64,000 nucleotides of DNA from Auanema rhodensis. Lineage: Eukaryota; Animalia; Nematoda. The translations under genes were made by a program, and so were the position numbers. The notes under the pieces were generated by a model, which searched no databases, was not told where the DNA came from, and saw only the letters and a program-made list of their open reading frames with translations. Shown piece after piece: positions 21,811-59,867 of the stretch. Each line of letters opens with the position of its first letter. Position 1 is the first letter of the stretch. The DNA lies in assembly GCA_964057225.1 (NCBI GenBank), contig OZ059894.1, forward strand, positions 10,106,001-10,170,000. Direction: 5' to 3'.

Positions 21811-24800
21811 TCATTCTTCGAGACTATTTTCTTCTACATGTAAGCTAGACTCTTCTTCATCGAGTTCTTCGTCGTCATGTTCTGGATCATGCTCATCCTC
21901 ATTTTCTTCATTATCATGAGATATTCCAGCAATACGGGCACTGCTATTTCCCATTTGCTGTTTTCTGAAACAATATTTGCCTCATTTCATTTTGAAAAAT
22001 TGTATGTGCTTACAGCTTCTCGATATCTTGGGCAGTTGGAATGGGCATGTCAACGAAGAAATTGGAATAACATTTTTTGATGGTCCCCTTGATATCTTCA
22101 GCAAATTTCAGACGATTGTCAACAGCACGGTCGTTACTGTCATGAACTTCGCGGACGTGGCGAGTTACGGCGTCTCTATTCGAAGCTCCCTGAAAGGTTA
22201 TGGTTAATGATTCGCGAAAAACACGTGCATGACTTACGAAATCGCACTTAGGACAAAGGAAAAGAAGCTGGTCCATATGAGTATAAGCATGCTCACCCAA
22301 TCTCGAGCTTGTTAACTTTCCACATAACTCACATGAAGCAACCTCGGTAGTTTTCTTCTTATAGTAATGGGCACCACCGAGAAGAAGACTGATCTGGAAT
22401 GAAAACCATGCATTGCAAAACATAAAGACGAGAAGAGAATGCAGCCGTTCTGGGCAGGAAAGTCGAGATGTTATAACCGACGCATACCTCTCTCAGCTTA
22501 GCCATTTCCAATTTCTTGACTTTCGACGCCGGACGACGTAGACCGAAACGTGGGAATCTACCATTAGATCGCCTTTTACGGGCGGGTGTTCGGGATGGTG
22601 AAGATTCCTAATGTTCACATATTAGCTAACACAAAATTTTGTTAATTGAAACCTCATCAACAACGTCTTCTTTAGCACTCAATGGATCTGATTCAACTTT
22701 GACTTCAGTAGATGAAACTTCGGCTTTAACAACCGATGACTGGTTTTGGGAAGCGGCAAATTCTGGTTGGTTTTCCGCTTCGATGTAAGTTTCCGCTACG
22801 GTATCAATATCGTCAAGAGTCAGAATCGGTTCTTCATCCTGGAACTCGGTGGAGTTCGTCTCATCTTGTTCGCTGTTAGTCCCTTCACCGTCATCTTTTC
22901 TCCTTTTCTGGACAAGTTAATAAGCGATTAACTATACACCAAGCACCCATACAAAGATGAAAAGGATCTACAACTCACCGATGATGGGATAGTCACTGGA
23001 ATCTTGCTACGACGTTTGTTATCCTGGGAAAACAGGGCTTGGAATCCAAAACATTTCTCTGACATCTGTTTAACTTCATCTTCATACTCCTGAAAGATTA
23101 AAAACTTCGTGTGCGCCTCTCAATCAAGAATCTTACATTTATACGGTCTTGAACTACATCTTCGGTACCATGTTCTTTCTTGCCGTGGGTTTGCACGGAC
23201 TGTGAACGATCATGGCCGAAATTACAAAACTTGCAAATATATCTATTAATGCCCATATCTTTAGCCATATGCCACAAGATGTGGAAACCCCGAATCTGAA
23301 AGAAACATTTAGTTCCATCTAGTAAAAAAATAAAGCGAAGCTTACTCTGTTTTGCATGGTTTTGCCGCACAGACGGCACTCCAAAGGATGCTCATCATCG
23401 GTGATTCCGCGATTTGTCAACATGGAGTTAGACATTGTGGCGGGAGACTTAGTTGCACCGGAGTTCAGCCCCCGAGCCTATAGTTAAACCTTACGTTACA
23501 GTATAGTTATAAGTTAATCGCAATGAGTAGCAATGCTTACCTTATTAGCTGCTTGTTGAGCTTGATAAGCAGCTTCAGCTTTAACGGCAGTTGGTCCAGG
23601 TGTGCTTCCATTTTTGGTGCCCAAAAGTTCCATTGAGAGTTCCTGAAAAAAAAACAATTCACTAAAATCCTATGAAAGGTAAAAAGCTGGTGTGAAAAAG
23701 CTATGTATGATTGAGCTATAGGTTTTCTTTGATAATTTTCAAGTACAAGCTGCTGAGAGAAAGAGAGAGAAAGAGAGAGAGAGTTCAAAAGTTCAGCGAA
23801 AACCAAATGTTAACCAGCTTAGACTCTAATATCAAAGAACATACAGCACAAGAAACAATGAAAGAATCTACACAAAAGCATTCCTAAACTATCGACTTAT
23901 TTTAAAGCTTAACAGAAATTTTGAAGTGAAAAGATAGTACACGGAACACGAACAAAACTCATATCACGTTCAATGTTGCTTGAAATAAGTAACTTCGAAC
24001 CGGGTTAGTTCTCAGGCAACACAACAGGACTTAACTAAAAAGCGAAAAAAAACATGCAGAGGTTAGGGAAGAAATATATATATAAATAACTATTAAACAG
24101 AGGAACTAAATGTGAGCTCCTAGCTTTGCGATAGATATTGAAAGATAGAGACAGCGAGAGACCTGTTAGTGTGCCTGAGAACTCACCTGTGGTGGAAAAA
24201 TGGCGGATATCAGAGATCGGTTGGATACAAAAAGCTCATGATTCAACTCCTGAAATCACGAGACAACACTGATAACCAACAATAATGATGCAGTTTGGCG
24301 ATATATATATATTCATCTGCCTTCACAAGTCACTCGGGTGGCTGACATGTAGACAAAGATGTCCTATCATTACCTATCATACAGGGCAGTTTTTTCAAAT
24401 TAAAAAGAACAGGGCTTCGACTTGTCTCACAGTAAGTTTACAAACTGGTCAGACATATTTAAGATTCCGTGACACGCGAACTTTAAGAGAATCATCGGAC
24501 GTTTCGGTTCTCGGATGCCAAACATAGAGCAGAACAAGCAAAAAAACGACTTTAAAAGAAAAGCAAGAATCATATCGACATCAGTCAAGTCAGTCAGTCA
24601 GTCACAGAGGATAACAAAAAAAGAAACTGAGTATTACCTGACAGCGCTGGAACAGCTCTAGTGAACGGTCTTCCATCATATCAGGGTCGATCTTTCCGTG
24701 AACTTTCGATTGGTGATTTTCCATCTGGTCTTTACGATAATGCTCTACCTGACAACCCTCAAACTTGCAACGGAATCGATAAGTCTAAAATTCTCCAAAT

Positions 24801-26477
24801 TAACCCAACATCTACTAGATGAAACCAATAACCCCATGATCTTTGGCTAAATGGAAAAACATATGCATCTGACGAGCACCCGCTGTTACTGGTTTATTGC
24901 ACTTGCTACATTCTCCTAATACACGCTTTTTGCTGACTCTTAAGAAAGAAAAATTCATAAGATAAATCCAAACTTTAACGCACTGGCTGGATTTAGAACT
25001 ATTTAAACGCTTCTCAGATGCAGCTTCTTCAATACGTCCATCTGACTGGCCAAACAGAGCAGCTACATCATCAAGAACAGATCTGAAACAAAGTTAAGTA
25101 ACTTTCATTAAAAAAGTTAAAACTAACAATGGGTTGAGTCCTTCTAATACATTCTCATCGCCATATCCATCGAGTTCAGAATCGTTGTGACTAGCTTCCA
25201 TCAACTGATCAATATCGGCTTTAAGTTTCTTAGCATTAAACAAGGAAGAAAGTGGATTAACGTCATCTAACACTGAAAATTACAAGTTTAATAAGGAGAA
25301 AAGCCGCTTAAAAGCTGAAGCGCGCTTAAATGAAAACTGCCCACGTAAAACACGTAAACCACGTAATTACGCAAATAAGGAAAATTTGAAATGAATAAAG
25401 GTTATGAATGGTCTGACAAAGCAGTGAACGAATAGCGTAAGATATTATAAAATTGCTTTGTATTCACCTTCACCCTCAATAATGGCTCCAGCGGCAGTAG
25501 CAGCCCGACTAATACAAGCAAGCAGAGCATCAGTACTGGATGAACCTTCGGTAATTTCAACATGGGGACGTTTACGACCTTCTGAAACTGAACCAGGCAT
25601 GGGCTCAGCAGGTGGAGACTCAGATAAGTCGAACTTTCCATTTTTGAAGTTCTGGAGAAGTAAAAATTAAAGAAGGATAATAAGAAATTGGTATACTTCA
25701 TCTCTAATATTGACAGCAAATGAATTCTTTAGATTGTTTAATTGATTTAAAGAATTATTGGAAATAGTATTATTCTTCTTGTCTTTCGTCGATGAGTCAG
25801 ATTTACGACGAGAAATAGCATTACTTAATGAACGATCCATAAGAGTTTGTAACTCTCGTTTCGCTGCCACATTATCAGCGTATATAAACTGGAAATATAT
25901 AAAATATTTACGAATGAAAACAATAATACACATACCTTGTGCATAACTTTTCTGTGCATGACGTGAACATGCTCTCGCATTTGGGCATCTGATGCACGTT
26001 CGCAAAGACAAATTGGGCATTGGAATGGCAGCCATCGAAGATGCTCTGTTTTGATATGTACCTAGAAACTCCTATAGTTCAGCACAATGGAGGAAATGAG
26101 CTAATACCTCCATATCTTCCGAACTATTCTTTTCGAGGCCACAGTCATCACAAATTAATGTCATGAGAGGAGTATTATTATATATTGAACTAGGATCACT
26201 AGGCTCATCCGTAAGTACCGTATTCATATTTTCGGATGCCTAAAAGAGCAATTTTTACTTAAAAGCAGTTGAAAAACAAATGGATACCCCGTTTTGTTGC
26301 TTTTGTAAACGAGCAGCTATATCCTCTATACCGCAATTTTTAGAAATCTGCAAATTGTCAATGAGATTCAAAATCTATTCTGTTTCATACTTGGCCTAAT
26401 GCTGCAGAGGTCGTTCCTCCAAGAAGTTGCTTAACCATCATCTGCCCTCTTGATTGCATCAGTTCGGGTGGGTACAT
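21811..26477 (-). CDS. Multi-exon C2H2 zinc-finger protein with four paired-finger modules and an acidic C-terminal tail
   Basis: ATG at 26477 (MYPPELMQSRGQMMVKQLLGG). Finger pairs: CDDC..HIKTEH / CPIC..HVHVMH; CSKC..HMFFH / CKFEGC..HQSKVH; CRLC..HILWH / CKFC..HGKKEH; CELC..HAYTH / CPKC..HVREVH. Each pair is followed by D-(N/R) and a predicted helix. Introns are canonical GT-AG. The D/E-rich last exon ends in TGA at 21811-21813. Orthologue not recognised with certainty. Confidence 0.9.
24003..24187 (-). promoter_or_regulatory. Intronic inverted repeat / pre-mRNA stem covering the cassette-exon 5' splice site
   Basis: 24003-24028 (ggttagttctcaggcaacacaacagg) is the reverse complement of 24162-24187 (cctgttagtgtgcctgagaactcacc) at 24 positions, with one mismatch and two 1-nt bulges. 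Confidence 0.8.
24187..24249 (-). CDS. Frame-preserving 63-nt cassette exon of the zinc-finger gene (ELNHELFVSNRSLISAIFPPQ)
   Basis: TTTCAG acceptor and CAG|GTGAGT donor, phase 0/0 matching both neighbouring exons, no stop codon. Lies in the gene's only ~1-kb intron. Confidence 0.75.
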
Positions 26478-32400: not shown

Positions 32401-35400
32401 TTGCTTCTCACCACGATAACTGAAGTCACACGTTTGCGCGTGGGCCAGACAGTGGTGATTCAAAAACAGTTCTAATGCGAAGACTTTAAAGATAAAATCG
32501 AGAAGTAATGTTCAGAATAAAAAGCGGCATAGGAGAATTATGGGTTATCATGTTGGGAGGCATATCGCCACAGAATTTCATTGGCCAACAAACAATTCTA
32601 GTGATATCAATAGACTTGCACGTCGACGAAACAAGTGATAGAAGAGATAACATGAGAATCGAATAGTGAAAATGGCGAATTCTTTGCAGTTGACTTACTT
32701 CTGCTACGAAGCACAAAGCACGGTATCACTCGAGAGATGAAGACTGCAGGGGGTGAGATCGAAAGACCTGGAGACAGCAGAGGAAGGATGAAACAGAGTT
32801 GGAGATGAAAAGAGCTCAACTGGTCTCTTCTGGTCTCTCGAAGAGACGACAACTAATCCGACACTCGTCCAGCTACAAGAGGGCCAGATGACGTGACGAG
32901 CGGAAAATAGAACCTTGCTCATATGTATGAAACGATGATGCTGTATGAATGCTGAAAGACCAGGAGCCACGAAGCGCACAAGAGTTGACGTGGCACCATC
33001 CGTTATCTCCACAATCTCCTCTAAACTCAGCGCAACAGACGTTGCATGTGTGAACAGTTGTTTCCAATAAATGCTCCTCCATTCAGCTTCATCCACACCG
33101 CCATCACCAGCATCATCATCATCATCAGCAGCAGTAGCAGCAGCCCACAGCATCATAGCTACCATCATCATCATCCACATCGACTTCAGCAGAAATAGCA
33201 GCAGTAGGAGACTTCAACGTTGCTTTTCCGATGGGATAAATGGGAAGAAGGAAGAGGGGGGAGGAAAAGAGGAGGAGGGGGTGGAAGGAAAGTGAGCAAG
33301 AAATGAACCGAAGATAACACTAAGTAGTAGAAGCTGGCCAGGAGAGAATATCCAACATTTCACGTAATTCAACGATTTTATGAGATTTTCGAGAGATGAT
33401 GGAAAGCATTCAACTGCTTTTACACTTTTTTGTCAAAAAAATCATATTTTCACTGTTGCTTACCATCTTTGGAATAGACACAGACAGGCTAAATTGCTAG
33501 TCTTCACCGAGGCAACCGACAGAATTTCGATGTTCTCAACCAAATTATGAATACTGTGTTCTAGTTATGAACGGCTTGTTGCTGTCGGGCCGCGAAATTT
33601 TCAAGCAGTTAGCTCGTCAGATCGTTCGATTGTTAGACAGGCAAAAAGGCTGACAGAGAAACTTTTAAACGGACGACAGAGATATGAGGCAACGACGACG
33701 TCGTCTTGACGAAGACAACCACGACGCCAGCCACGACGACATGGGCAAATAAGTGAAGAAGCATGGGAAGAGACGATACGCCGAGATGCCAACGTATTGA
33801 CTTGACATCGGTCTCTGCTCTTCGATAATCATCACCCAAATGAAAGTTGACGACTACGACGCAGATGAAGATGACAAATGAGAAAATGCCGTTGGAGATG
33901 CTACAGCGTGAGACAAGAGAGCAGAATAAGGAATAAAAAAGAAAAAGGAAGACTTTCAATGAGAAAAAGCATGGGGTCAGTTAATATGGAGACCCAGTTG
34001 ATACCATGTAAGACTTAACAGGAGGCCGACCTACACAACGGTTTGGGCACGCTGCCAATGGGTCACTCAAACCTCATTCAGGCTCCAGGACACCATCATG
34101 AGTTGAGTCGTTGGGCTGAAGAAGTTAGTGGCTCGCAAGTAAAAATAAGAGTTGAAAGAGAACAAAGTGGGATAAGCTGACTAAGTACAAAGCGGATAGC
34201 CACAAGACTACAACGTTTTAGCTGATTGTTAAGACGTAGGTTGAGATAGCTTCAGAAGGAGTGGAAAGTGAAAGAAGCGAAGAAATGATGGGAAGGAAGG
34301 AAGGAATAAAGGAATAAGATGTCGAAAAAAAGAAAAAAGAAGAAGAGGAAAAAGATGAAGAAGAAGAAGAAAACCAAGGAGAAGAAGGAGAAGAAGAATC
34401 GATAGAAGACGACGTCAGACTCTTGCTTCCACATCGTCCGACGCCAATAAAGCCACATACATACACACACACACACACATACACACAACAGCTGGTCGAC
34501 GACGAAATATGTGTGTGTGTGTGTGCGTGTGTAGGGCACTTATGGCTGTGGATCATAAAATAGCGTTGACAACGTAGACGACAATGTAGAAACTACGACG
34601 ACGACGATGAAGATGAAGATGATTATGATTATAATGAGGATGAGCATTATGATTGCCGGTGTTGCTGACTATGGTGAACGATAAGCATAGGCTGCAGCAA
34701 TGAACAAGCTGGTGAAGAGGACTTACGAGACTATATGCAGAGAGAGAAGAACGATTACGAGAACCTCAATAGACCGATGATGAAGTAAAAGAGAATCAAC
34801 ATACACACACGTACAGACAGCTAGATAGATAGATAGATAGATATATAGAAAGAAAGAGCAAAGCACCGAGAATACATCATAAGCCCACAGACGATGCCAT
34901 TGAACGTTGACGATAACGGGCTATGATGTGTCTGGGGCAATGGTGATGATGACAGAATGTGTGTGTATGTGTGTTTAAACACGGTATCTCTTCCACTCTC
35001 TACTTGCTATCCCTCACTCTCTGTATGTATCTCTCACCCTCTCTTTCTCTCTCTTTTTCCCTCTCTTACTATCTCTTTGTGCGATGAAATGTGTATACAG
35101 TATGGAATACCATATAGACCAGAACGTCATCAGATTATGATATACATATACTGGAATAGCAATACAGATGAAAAGCGAGTGAATGATATGAGGAGATAGG
35201 CATCAAGCGAATATTGGGGACAAGAGAGTGAAAGGAGGACGAGAAACAGAAGAGTGAGGATCAGCAGCAACCACGGTTCGCCGTCGATGGGAGAATAAGC
35301 ATGGTTGATGATCGAGCGATGCATTGAAAGCGAGAGGCTAGTTGCAGCTCAAGCAGCAGGTGGGTCGCCTCTCAACGTTGACGAGGATGACAACTGAATA

Positions 35401-57485: not shown

Positions 57486-58382
57486 TTAAACTATAAAACT
57501 TTGTAGATCTTTCATTGAATAATTAATTCTTTCTTCAGTATTAATACCAACAATAGCACTTGATAAACGAGCTCTTAATTATATGCATATAGTTAAATAT
57601 TGTTAAGTTTAAAACTTACTTTTCTAAAAATTCTTTTTTTAAAGCTTTATATTTCTTATTATCACCAAACCAAAATGGACATAGATATTCTCTTTAAAAT
57701 AAAATTTAATAATAATATAATAGTTAATTATGCTATTTATGCTATATTATACTTATAATACTAACCTAAGTGCATAAATATTGAATACAAGCCATGCAGC
57801 AAGGCAAAGAATACCAAAAACAATGTATAGCGTTTCTCGATATTCCGTTAAATTGAGCAGAATTTTGCTGGCTGAAAATAAATGTTTATTGAGAAAATAA
57901 AATAAAATTTAATTGAAATTTAAAAAAAAATTATTGGTTTGTTATTATGTACGACCGCATTACATTTTGAATAATTATAAAATAATTTTCACGTTGTTTT
58001 TAATGTTTTATTCTAATTTTACGTGAAGAAAAGGAAAGTGAACGTTAATGTAAAGTGAAGAAAATGATAAAGTTTGTTGTTGAAAATATTTTTTTTTCTT
58101 TAAGTTTAAAAGCTTTTATAGGGCTTTTAGACAAAGTTTAAAAATATGTCTGAGAATAGAAATAGGTTTTGATGACCAATTTGTTCTTAAAAAAAACAAA
58201 AAAGTTGTTTTATTCAAAGAACAAAACAAGAAACAAGGTGAATCTATCTATCTATCTATCTCAATGTAGTTAGGACGATAGGATAATACAGAAATGTTCT
58301 TGCTATCTAAGAACAAATAGCAGAAACATTGAAATTGCAATAAGTTATAAGGAAAAATACCTGTTAACCAGCTAGAAATCAT
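57486..58382 (-). CDS. Uncharacterised 95-aa single-pass membrane protein, 4 exons
   Basis: Exons 58382-58361, 57871-57766, 57691-57620 and 57573-57486 (288 nt) splice in frame at GT-AG sites. Product: MISSWLTASKILLNLTEYRETLYIVFGILCLAAWLVFNIYALREYLCPFWFGDNKKYKALKKEFLEKARLSSAIVGINTEERINYSMKDLQSFIV*. The first exon is the least certain. Confidence 0.7.
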
Positions 58383-59867
58383 GCCCCCTGTAGTTGTGAC
58401 TGTTTAGCTTATTCAATGATTAAGAGAGATTTTCGGAAAAACATGAGCCAACAAACGGTGGGAGGTGGCTATTGATATAACAGATATGAAGAGATTAACC
58501 TATAGGTTGATGTGATGACGGACTATGAACTAACTGGATGTGTTTCAGTCTGATGATTTTGAACTGTTTAAGAGAGAAGTGTGAGATAGATAGATAGATA
58601 GATAGATAGATGAGGTAAGATTGAGAGAAATAGAGAGAGAGAGCAGGAAATGGAGAAATGCTAGAGAGAAGATGTTGTCCAAAAGACATGTAAACTTAGT
58701 GAGAAAAACATGTATAACTAAGAAGTCAGTTGTTCTTTTAATTAAAAAGAAAAAGAAGTGTCGTTGTCGCGTCGTCGTCGTCGTCGTTTGTCATTGACGT
58801 TCGTAGTTCAGCTAAGAGCTCGTCAGCCTCCCATCGATATCATCTCTTATCCATTCAATTTTGTCATTTTAAAGCATTTTACAGCTTTACAGATTGACAT
58901 CATCAACGTTACTTTCATATATAAACTGAGGAAAAATGGGTGATGAGTTAGTGTGACATGAGATTGATTTTCAAAGATTGATAGCCATAGCCATATCATC
59001 ATCATTCCCTGCTTGCCCCCACCTACTCTACAGACGCTAATCATGTGAGATGAAAATGAGCAAGAAAAAAAATGAAAAAAACGATGAAAAGTACGAAGGA
59101 ATTGTTGGAAAAATGAAAATTTTGACTGAATAAGCAGCAGAAGATGAAGTAGTCGAAAGAATATAAATTGAAAAGACAAAATCAATTGTAATAAATCAGA
59201 AACAGATTTTATATAACAGGTGAAGAAGAAGACGAAGACAATTTGAAAGTGAGGAAGAAAAGAAAAACGTTTTTTTTTCTTTTTCTCTGTCATTTCTTGT
59301 TTTCAATAAACTATTTGATATTGAAAGTAAGAAATGTTGGTCAAACTATTCTTTTTCTTTTCTCTTTTACAATCTTTCCTAGTTTGCTTCTAACAACTTA
59401 TTCTATAAAATTGAATTTAAGGAAGAAGAAGAAGAAGAAGAAGAAGTGGAGTAGGAGGAGTGGGAGGGAGGAGCAAGATTGAGAATAAGGGAAGACTACA
59501 AGAAGAGATTCAACTAAAGTTTGATAAAATGAAACTTAACTAGAAGAATTACATAGCTTTAGCTATTTAGTATAGAACAAATCATTAAATCTTCTATTAT
59601 ATAATACATTTAACTATATTATATAGTTTATATATAAACAAAGAATATAAGAACAATCTTTATTTCTTAACTTAACTATAACATTTATTTTTTACATAAC
59701 AATCAAAGTTTTTAATGAAATCACAATTACTCGTATGGATATTTGATTTTATTTATAAATACATGTATGTACATTCTTTCTTTCTTTTCAAATTATATTT
59801 TTTTTCTTTAAAAATATTAATTTGTTCCTATTATTCAGATGTTTCATCATCATCATCTTCTGCTTTG

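What the first reader, a model, noticed from the sequence alone, without database searches (positions are those of the whole stretch)
24003..24249. RNA-structure splicing switch: a 24-bp stem buries the 5' splice site of a zinc-finger cassette exon
Seen: on the minus-strand pre-mRNA, G|GTGAGTTCTCAGGCACACTAACAGG (24187-24162) pairs with CCTGTTGTGTTGCCTGAGAACTAACC (24028-24003) across a 133-nt loop. That gives 24 Watson-Crick pairs including an unbroken 12-bp run, and it covers the donor. Both arms and the loop each contain CTAAC (24165-24169, 24062-24066, 24004-24008), and the loop holds TGCATG (24053-24058). Established: CUAAC is bound by STAR proteins (ASD-2/QKI) and UGCAUG by RBFOX proteins (FOX-1/ASD-1), both nematode tissue-specific splicing regulators. 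Inference: the exon is silenced by default and exposed when these proteins bind and melt the stem.
Basis: partly seen in the sequence, partly recalled or inferred. Interest (0 to 1): 0.78.

Follow-up and report, generated by a model that had tools for sequence, protein, structure and literature searches.

The report
Conserved RNA stem over splice donor
In a nematode zinc-finger gene, a 63-base optional exon has its splice donor paired with a stretch about 150 bases downstream, and the pairing is kept with matching changes on both sides from free-living Auanema to parasitic strongylids, so it is very likely a working RNA structure that tunes use of the exon.

Summary
On the minus strand, 24187-24159 pairs with 24031-24003: 24 Watson-Crick pairs, a 12-bp run, duplex -41.7 kcal/mol, z about -6. 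It covers the donor CAG|GUGAGU of a 63-nt in-frame exon (24249-24187).

The gene is the ortholog of the protein a C. remanei record names CRE-ZTF-12. The exon is a real alternative exon. RNA contigs break at its two neighbour exons, and depth fits 63 nt at intermediate inclusion. Auanema sp. JU1783 has two annotated isoforms that differ only by these 21 residues, and the exon is annotated across clade V.

Both arms are 97% identical to JU1783, against 61% for the loop. Ancylostoma and Dictyocaulus have the same donor-to-+150 stem (z -5.2, -5.5) with compensatory changes (A:U to G:C; G:C, G:U, A:U). C. remanei and Diploscapter lack it. UGCAUG at +80 to +130 is conserved in five of six species and lies in the loop.

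Not supported: 'silenced by default', and two of the three CUAAC sites as protein sites. Melting of the stem by proteins is untested. The exon encodes a linker, not a zinc finger.

This is a new, well-supported member of a known kind (5' splice-site masking stems such as SMN2 TSL2/ISTL1). First readers noted similar stems elsewhere in this genome; those notes are unchecked.

The parts
24638..24784 (-). Upstream constitutive exon U (49 codons, ...LELFQRCQ), donor CAG|GUAAUA
   Evidence: Spliced RNA contigs run through it and end 1-2 nt past its last base in all four runs. Gene model.
24250..24637 (-). Intron 1 (388 nt). Its last 49 nt (24250-24298) are 96% identical to Auanema JU1783
   Evidence: A low-depth unspliced contig covers 24224-24666.
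24187..24249 (-). Alternative cassette exon, 63 nt, in frame (ELNHELFVSNRSLISAIFPPQ), acceptor UUUCAG|G, donor CAG|GUGAGU
   Evidence: Frame. Excess RNA depth fits exactly these 63 nt. JU1783 isoforms P0136 and P0069 differ only by this exon. The exon is annotated in many clade V orthologs.
24159..24187 (-). 5' arm of the stem: last exon base plus intron +1 to +28. It holds the donor and ACUAAC (24165-24170)
   Evidence: 97% identical to JU1783 over +1 to +32.
24032..24158 (-). Loop of 127 nt, 61% identical to JU1783 with indels. It holds the conserved UGCAUG (24053-24058) and a non-conserved CUAAC (24062-24066)
24003..24031 (-). 3' arm of the stem: complement of the donor region. It holds UGUUGUG and, at its end, ACUAACC opposite GGUGAGU
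   Evidence: 97% identical to JU1783. Homologous arms in Ancylostoma and Dictyocaulus at the same distance.
23643..24002 (-). Rest of intron 2 (whole intron 24186-23643, 544 nt), not alignable to JU1783
   Evidence: An unspliced contig covers 23617-24215 at low depth.
23541..23642 (-). Downstream constitutive exon D (ELSMELLGTKNG...)
   Evidence: Spliced contigs. The junction RCQ|ELSMELLGT is conserved in all orthologs.

Best explanation
The stem is a conserved, functional long-range structure in the pre-mRNA of a ztf-12-type zinc-finger gene. The donor of a 63-nt alternative exon (exon -1 to intron +25) pairs with a segment that starts about 150 nt further into the same intron.

Proposed mechanism (inferred): once the 3' arm is transcribed, it competes with U1 snRNA for the 5' splice site. 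This holds a near-consensus donor (CAG|GUGAGU) at partial use, so that both the 827-residue form (exon skipped) and the 848-residue form (exon included) are made. The loop displays a conserved UGCAUG, a likely FOX-1/ASD-1 site, which probably raises inclusion in some tissues.

Shown here: the pairing, its selection, the alternative exon, and the conserved motif. Inferred: that the stem represses the exon, and that proteins shift the balance.
For: - Pairing and its strength.
- Alternative exon. All 15 other introns are spliced through in the RNA contigs, but the contigs break at U and D in all four runs. Excess depth fits the 63 nt. Three further joints were reported as not shown. The depth model for X3 and X4 gives inclusion plus skipping equal to the flank depth, with PSI about 0.4-0.5. 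Two JU1783 isoforms differ only by this exon.
- Selection. The arms are 97% identical to JU1783, against 87% for the exon itself, 61% for the loop and 29-47% for the flanks.
- Same stem in strongylids. A donor-to-about-+150 duplex is found independently in A. ceylanicum (-42.3 kcal/mol, z -5.2) and D. viviparus (-38.7, z -5.5), with 0 of 200 shuffles as good.
- Compensatory changes. +11 changes A:U to G:C, and +12 goes G:C / G:U / A:U. Both are seen in an unguided MAFFT+RNAalifold run and in the manual alignment, which adds two alignment-dependent cases.
- Covariance model. A model built from the two Auanema sequences puts its top hit at the homologous place in both strongylid introns (E 0.019 and 0.014), and the sense strand scores well above the antisense strand.
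- Motif. UGCAUG lies at +80 to +130 in 5 of 6 species and never in intron 1. GCAUG is a neuron-biased intronic enhancer in C. elegans (PMC13199693).
Against: - There is no functional or structure-probing data.
- The direction of the effect (repression) is inferred only by analogy.
- Predicted accessibility does not single out this donor: two constitutive donors of the same gene are predicted equally buried.
- The exon is well included in whole-animal RNA, so any repression is partial.
- C. remanei and Diploscapter keep the alternative exon without such a stem, so the stem is not required for alternative use of the exon.
- Covariation rests on only three lineages, and just two of the four compensatory pairs are free of alignment ambiguity.
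- The junction reads themselves were not displayed by the reads tool, so inclusion levels come from binned depth.
Confidence: 0.66

Rival explanations
1. The stem is functional but works as scaffolding, not as a mask. It closes a loop of about 130 nt to present the conserved UGCAUG (and perhaps ACUAAC) to RBFOX or STAR proteins next to the exon, or it shortens the effective intron. Its net effect would be to promote or time inclusion rather than repress it.
For: - UGCAUG lies in the loop in all four species with the stem.
- The distance from donor to 3' arm is nearly constant: GAGAAC at +155 to +177.
- Inclusion is substantial.
- RNA bridges for RBFOX are described in reviews (PMC7404189, PMC10790352).
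Against: The pairing includes the GU and positions -1 to +6 in every species. A mere loop-closing helix would not need that, and a paired donor cannot bind U1 at the same time.
Confidence: 0.15
2. The two arms are separate single-stranded protein-binding sites: ACUAAC for a STAR protein in the 5' arm, and UGUUGUG or GUGUG for CELF/UNC-75 or SUP-12 in the 3' arm. Their complementarity is a by-product.
For: - ACUAAC is kept in the 5' arm of all four species.
- The 3' arm is GU-rich, with UGUUGUG in Auanema and GUGUG in strongylids.
- UUGUG and YGUGUG act as intronic enhancers in C. elegans (PMC13199693).
Against: - Compensatory double changes at +11 and +12 lie outside these motifs.
- The donor-complement part of the 3' arm changes along with the donor: GUGAGU/ACUAAC against GUUGGU/ACGGAU or ACUAAU.
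- 23-25 of 28 columns stay paired in each lineage.
Confidence: 0.08
3. It is a neutral leftover of an inverted duplication or a small inverted-repeat transposon that landed at the exon border, with no role in splicing.
For: - An inverted repeat of this quality arises by chance in about 1 of 60 random windows.
- The + strand folds as well as the - strand in this species.
Against: - It is single-copy in the window.
- It sits at the orthologous place in four species of three lineages.
- The arms are better conserved than the coding exon.
- G:U pairs and covariance-model scores favour the sense strand.
Confidence: 0.04
4. The duplex is a substrate for double-strand RNA enzymes (ADAR editing, or Dicer/RNAi), and any effect on splicing is secondary.
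For: An imperfect duplex of about 26 bp is within the range such enzymes bind (general knowledge, not tested here).
Against: - The unspliced RNA contigs over both arms show no other letters, though depth was low.
- A 127-nt loop is unlike a miRNA precursor.
- There was no Rfam match.
Confidence: 0.03

Closest known systems
SMN2 exon 7: terminal stem-loop 2 (TSL2) over the 5' splice site, and ISTL1, an intra-intronic stem formed by a long-distance interaction (PMC1802598; PMC3783185)
   Same: An RNA helix that involves the donor region of an alternative exon and a partner strand far inside the same intron. In SMN2 it is inhibitory, and sequestering the 3' strand restores inclusion.
   Different: - Here a single continuous helix of about 26 bp joins the donor itself to a strand about 150 nt away.
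- The donor is strong, not weak.
- The evidence is comparative (conservation and compensatory changes), not mutational or from probing.
- The host is a nematode.
MAPT (tau) exon 10 donor stem-loop (own knowledge; covered in review PMC7404189)
   Same: A stem at the exon-intron border limits U1 access and sets the ratio of two protein isoforms.
   Different: The tau stem is a short local hairpin (a loop of a few bases), whereas this one spans a 127-nt loop that carries a conserved protein motif.
RBFOX-dependent exons and 'RNA bridges' (reviews PMC7404189, PMC10790352); GCAUG as a FOX-1/ASD-1 intronic enhancer in C. elegans (PMC13199693)
   Same: A conserved UGCAUG lies about 100 nt downstream of a cassette exon, inside a long-range RNA structure.
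   Different: In RNA bridges the helix brings a distant RBFOX site close to the exon. Here the site is already near, and the helix itself covers the donor.
Conserved intronic stem-loops that conceal branch sites (SF3B3 poison exon, PMC11162794)
   Same: A conserved intronic structure hides a core splicing signal of an alternative exon. Both arms here even carry the branch-site-like ACUAAC.
   Different: The hidden signal here is the 5' splice site. The ACUAAC in the 3' arm lies 360 nt from the next acceptor, and the exon is an in-frame coding exon, not a poison exon.

Membership tests
5' splice-site-masking RNA structure that controls a cassette exon | Base pairing includes the donor nucleotides (about -3 to +6) | tested here: met
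   Positions -1, +1, +2 and +4 to +25 are paired in the window. The same holds in JU1783, A. ceylanicum and D. viviparus.
5' splice-site-masking RNA structure that controls a cassette exon | The exon is alternatively included | tested here: met
   Contig breaks, and depth that fits 63 nt at intermediate level. Two annotated isoforms in JU1783. Included and skipped forms are annotated in several species. The junction reads themselves were not shown.
5' splice-site-masking RNA structure that controls a cassette exon | The structure is conserved, with compensatory changes | tested here: met
   three lineages, with two unambiguous and two alignment-dependent compensatory pairs.
5' splice-site-masking RNA structure that controls a cassette exon | Disrupting the stem raises inclusion and compensatory mutation restores it; the stem forms in vivo | not testable with these tools
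   This needs a minigene or genome editing, plus DMS/SHAPE probing.
RBFOX (FOX-1/ASD-1) regulated exon | Conserved (U)GCAUG within a few hundred nt downstream of the exon | tested here: met
   UGCAUG lies at +129, +111, +80, +92/+105 and +115 in five species. Diploscapter has only GCAUG, at +203.
RBFOX (FOX-1/ASD-1) regulated exon | Inclusion depends on fox-1/asd-1 | not testable with these tools
   No knock-down data. A full-text search for ztf-12 found no relevant paper.
STAR protein (ASD-2/GLD-1/QKI type) regulated exon | A conserved ACUAAY element near the exon that is not explained otherwise | tested here: inconclusive
   ACUAAC in the 5' arm is kept in the four species with the stem, but it is part of the helix in Auanema. 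The 3'-arm and loop copies are not conserved as motifs. There is none near the donor in C. remanei or Diploscapter.
Miniature inverted-repeat transposon | Many copies, target-site duplication, presence/absence between relatives | tested here: not met
   The arm core occurs only twice in the window, as the two arms. There is no flanking duplication. It sits at the orthologous site in four species. A genome-wide copy count could not be made.
miRNA / mirtron or other described RNA family | Match to a curated family, or a short-loop hairpin of about 22 bp | tested here: not met
   No Rfam match at gathering score. The loop is 127 nt and poorly conserved.

The most novel reading that the evidence does not exclude
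The stem and the motifs form one protein-gated switch that has been kept since the common ancestor of Auanema and the strongylid parasites. The helix keeps a strong donor shut. Tissue-specific proteins open it, either by binding the loop UGCAUG (FOX-1/ASD-1) or by binding the single-stranded arms (ACUAAC: STAR; UGUUGUG/GUGUG: CELF or SUP-12). The result would be a tissue-specific isoform of a ZTF-12-type transcription factor. To my knowledge this would be the first nematode splicing switch supported by covariation, and it could be tested with compensatory mutants in a culturable worm.
Probability: 0.25. Interest if true: 0.72.

Novelty: new member of a known kind. Interest (0 to 1): 0.6.

Why it matters
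Splicing control by RNA structure is well documented in mammals and flies. In nematodes, splicing regulation has been explained almost entirely by short protein-binding motifs.

This case combines several things:
- a validated alternative exon in a conserved but unstudied transcription-factor gene;
- a donor-masking helix kept, with compensatory changes, across free-living and parasitic clade V nematodes;
- a conserved RBFOX motif in its loop;
- relatives (Caenorhabditis, Diploscapter) that keep the exon but lack the helix.

That gives a natural comparison and a simple experiment (arm and compensatory mutations) to measure how far structure and proteins each set the isoform ratio.

Tried and rejected
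- **Transposon or repeat origin.** The arm core occurs only in the two arms, and all other inverted repeats in the window are microsatellites.
- **Known RNA family.** No Rfam hit.
- **Predicted accessibility as a discriminator.** RNAplfold puts this donor among the most buried (1e-4), but two constitutive donors score the same, so the measure does not decide anything.
- **A competing RNA helix (a true RNA-RNA switch).** Neither arm has a significant alternative partner in intron 1, the exon or the rest of intron 2 in any of four species.
- **Word search with the 137-residue ORF.** It found nothing because of its length window. The exhaustive search was then needed.
- **More relatives.**
  - Look-ups failed for the Mesorhabditis, C. 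elegans, Haemonchus, Necator, C. briggsae and short JU1783 products.
  - The Cooperia locus has an assembly gap over the site.
  - A metagenome scan with the exon-start pattern gave seven chance hits and no nematode.
- **Covariance model with default filters.** It missed the strongylid sites. With filters off it found them.
- **Depth model in runs X1 and X2.** It does not close there, so only X3 and X4 give a usable inclusion estimate.
- **Literature.** A search for ztf-12 found nothing relevant.

Full report
**1. The observation**

On the minus strand the window reads ...CCACCACAG|GTGAGTTCTCAGGCACACTAACAGGTCT... at 24195-24159 and ...AGTCCTGTTGTGTTGCCTGAGAACTAACCCGG... at 24031-24000.

- The repeat finder reports arms 24003-24031 / 24159-24187: 29 nt, 79% complementary, 127 nt apart.
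- The 201-nt stretch folds at -52.2 kcal/mol, z -5.1. The + strand folds about as well.
- The arm duplex alone is about -40 kcal/mol.
- Every other inverted repeat of 20 nt or more within 400 nt in the window is a microsatellite.
- One of 60 random 64-kb sequences with the same dinucleotide content holds an inverted repeat as good as this one.

So the stem is real and unusual. On sequence statistics alone, though, a scan of a whole genome would meet a few such cases by chance.

**2. The gene and the exon**

Four RNA-type runs from one study hold the locus as spliced contigs. Fifteen introns of 45-195 nt are removed with GT..AG on the minus strand.

Joining the exons gives an open frame from the ATG at 26227 to the stop near 21811. 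It encodes 827 residues if 24638 is joined to 23642, and 848 residues if the 63-nt piece 24249-24187 is included.

- The piece has a UUUCAG|G acceptor and a CAG|GUGAGU donor.
- It is open only in the gene's frame and encodes ELNHELFVSNRSLISAIFPPQ.
- That is a linker insert between zinc-finger modules, not a finger.

An exhaustive protein search followed by a word search identify the gene as the nematode-wide family that one record names CRE-ZTF-12. The closest relative is Auanema sp. JU1783, at 81% identity.

**3. Is the exon alternative?**

- The long RNA contigs cross every other junction, but in all four runs they stop 1-2 nt past exon U (24638) and at exon D (23642). An assembly graph does this where paths branch.
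- Low-depth unspliced contigs cover both introns.
- The tool stated that three further joints exist but were not shown.
- Every depth bin outside 23612-24668 is explained exactly by the two main contigs. Inside that range, the excess in run X1 equals a depth of about 155 over exactly 29 + 34 nt of the candidate exon.
- For X3 and X4, a three-contig model gives inclusion of about 40-54 and skipping of about 47-56. The sum, 87-97, matches the flank depth of 87. That is a PSI of roughly 0.4-0.5.
- The model does not close for X1 and X2, so these numbers are rough inference, not read counts.

Independent support comes from annotation. JU1783 has two annotated products, 887 and 866 residues, that differ only by ELNHELFVSNRSLISTIFPKQ.

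The exon always starts ELNHELF and ends in Q. It is present in annotated proteins of Caenorhabditis species, Diploscapter, Heterorhabditis, Necator, Haemonchus, Dictyocaulus, Nippostrongylus and Parelaphostrongylus. Skipped forms are annotated in several of these groups too.

The exon is therefore an old, genuine alternative exon, and in whole animals it is not silent.

**4. Is the stem under selection?**

Comparison with the JU1783 locus (L001), by segment:

| Segment | Identity to JU1783 |
|---|---|
| 49 nt before the acceptor | 96% |
| Cassette exon | 87% |
| 5' arm | 97% |
| Loop | 61%, with 19 gap columns |
| 3' arm | 97% |
| Sequence on either side | 29-47% |

The arms show no change between these two species, so this pair cannot show covariation.

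In Ancylostoma ceylanicum (L002) and Dictyocaulus viviparus (L003) the exon is longer and its donor is CAG|GUUGGU. In each species the best partner of the donor region in the downstream intron again starts at about +145 to +150. The energies are -42.3 kcal/mol (z -5.2) and -38.7 kcal/mol (z -5.5), and none of 200 shuffles does as well.

The arms differ from Auanema at several positions, yet 23-25 of 28 columns remain paired in each species:

- +11 changes from A:U to G:C.
- +12 runs G:C / G:U / A:U. These first two lie next to an ungapped invariant block, and MAFFT plus RNAalifold recovers them without guidance.
- +15 (A:U to C:G) and +23 (A:U to U:A) depend on where an indel is placed.
- Near the donor, the 3' arm follows the donor: GUGAGU faces ACUAAC, while GUUGGU faces ACGGAU or ACUAAU.
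- G:U pairs favour the sense strand.

A covariance model built from the two Auanema sequences puts its top hit at the homologous site in both strongylid introns (E 0.019 and 0.014). The antisense strand scores far lower.

C. remanei and Diploscapter keep the exon but have no such duplex: z +0.4 and -1.7, with no full-length model hit at the donor. Diploscapter has a different local hairpin after the donor.

No alternative partner for either arm was found in any species.

**5. Motifs**

- UGCAUG lies at +80 to +130 from the cassette donor in five of six species and never in intron 1. In the four species with the stem it is in the loop.
- GCAUG is a neuron-biased intronic enhancer assigned to FOX-1/ASD-1 in C. 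elegans (PMC13199693).
- ACUAAC at +17 to +23 is kept in the four species with the stem.
- The CUAAC in the 3' arm is not conserved as a motif, and the loop CUAAC is lost in JU1783.
- The 3' arm is GU-rich (UGUUGUG in Auanema, GUGUG in strongylids) and resembles CELF/UNC-75 and SUP-12 sites. This is a lead only.

**6. Mechanism**

Best reading: the helix competes with U1 for a near-consensus donor once the 3' arm has been transcribed, about 175 nt later. That sets partial inclusion. Proteins at the loop UGCAUG, and perhaps on the arms, shift the balance by tissue.

- Shown: the pairing, its conservation, the compensatory changes, alternative use of the exon, and conservation of the motif.
- Inferred: the repressive direction, the kinetic competition, and the protein gating.

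Predicted accessibility does not single out this donor. The stem is also not needed for the exon to be alternative, since Caenorhabditis lacks it.

**7. Comparison with known systems**

The closest known systems are:
- SMN2 exon 7, with TSL2 over the donor and ISTL1 formed by a long-distance interaction (PMC1802598, PMC3783185);
- the tau exon 10 stem;
- RBFOX RNA bridges (PMC7404189, PMC10790352);
- concealed-branch-site stem-loops (PMC11162794).

This case belongs to that kind. What is new is the host group, the single long helix that joins the donor to a strand 150 nt away around a loop with a conserved RBFOX motif, and its conservation between free-living and parasitic clade V nematodes. 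No paper on ztf-12 splicing was found.

**8. Limits**

- Only three lineages could be compared.
- The Cooperia locus has a gap at the site.
- A metagenome scan gave only chance hits.

Noticed in passing
window 24250-24298 (minus strand): The 49 nt before the cassette acceptor are 96% identical to Auanema JU1783, while the intron further upstream cannot be aligned. The block is GU-rich (UGUUGU) and is probably a second regulatory element.
   Followed up: partly
P0014 (C. elegans record), junction after ...LELFQKCQ: This annotated C. elegans product reads the exon after the cassette in another frame (ISPWNCSELKMERYPDRL...) and later returns to the normal frame. It is either an odd isoform or an annotation slip at the same junction.
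   Followed up: no
L002:4841-5186, L003:3685-3816, and proteins P0058, P0061, P0063, P0073: The cassette exon varies from 63 nt (Auanema; 21 residues in Heterorhabditis too) to 132 nt in Dictyocaulus and at least 346 nt in Ancylostoma, counting an assembly gap. Strongylid versions carry Ala/Gln or Gln runs. Only the first 8 or so codons (ELNHELF) and the final CAG are kept.
   Followed up: partly
L006:4180-4255 (Diploscapter pachys): A separate local inverted repeat of about 18 bp starts about 25 nt after the cassette donor. It does not cover the donor and is unrelated in sequence to the Auanema/strongylid stem.
   Followed up: no
window 24249-24232 and 23642-23625 (minus strand): The cassette starts ELNHEL and the next exon starts ELSMEL (13 of 27 bases alike). 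This may be the trace of an old partial exon duplication.
   Followed up: no
window about 26241-26285 (minus strand): RNA contigs have a loose end at 26240 whose letters continue at about 26286. This suggests a 45-nt intron in the 5' untranslated region.
   Followed up: no
window 23612-23642 and 24638-24668: In runs X1 and X2 the binned depth over the exon ends that face the alternative region is 2-3 times the flank depth. The simple contig model does not explain this.
   Followed up: partly
window 34443-34546 and 58242-58611: (CA)n/(TG)n and (ATCT)n/(AGAT)n microsatellite pairs form the other long inverted repeats of the window.
   Followed up: no
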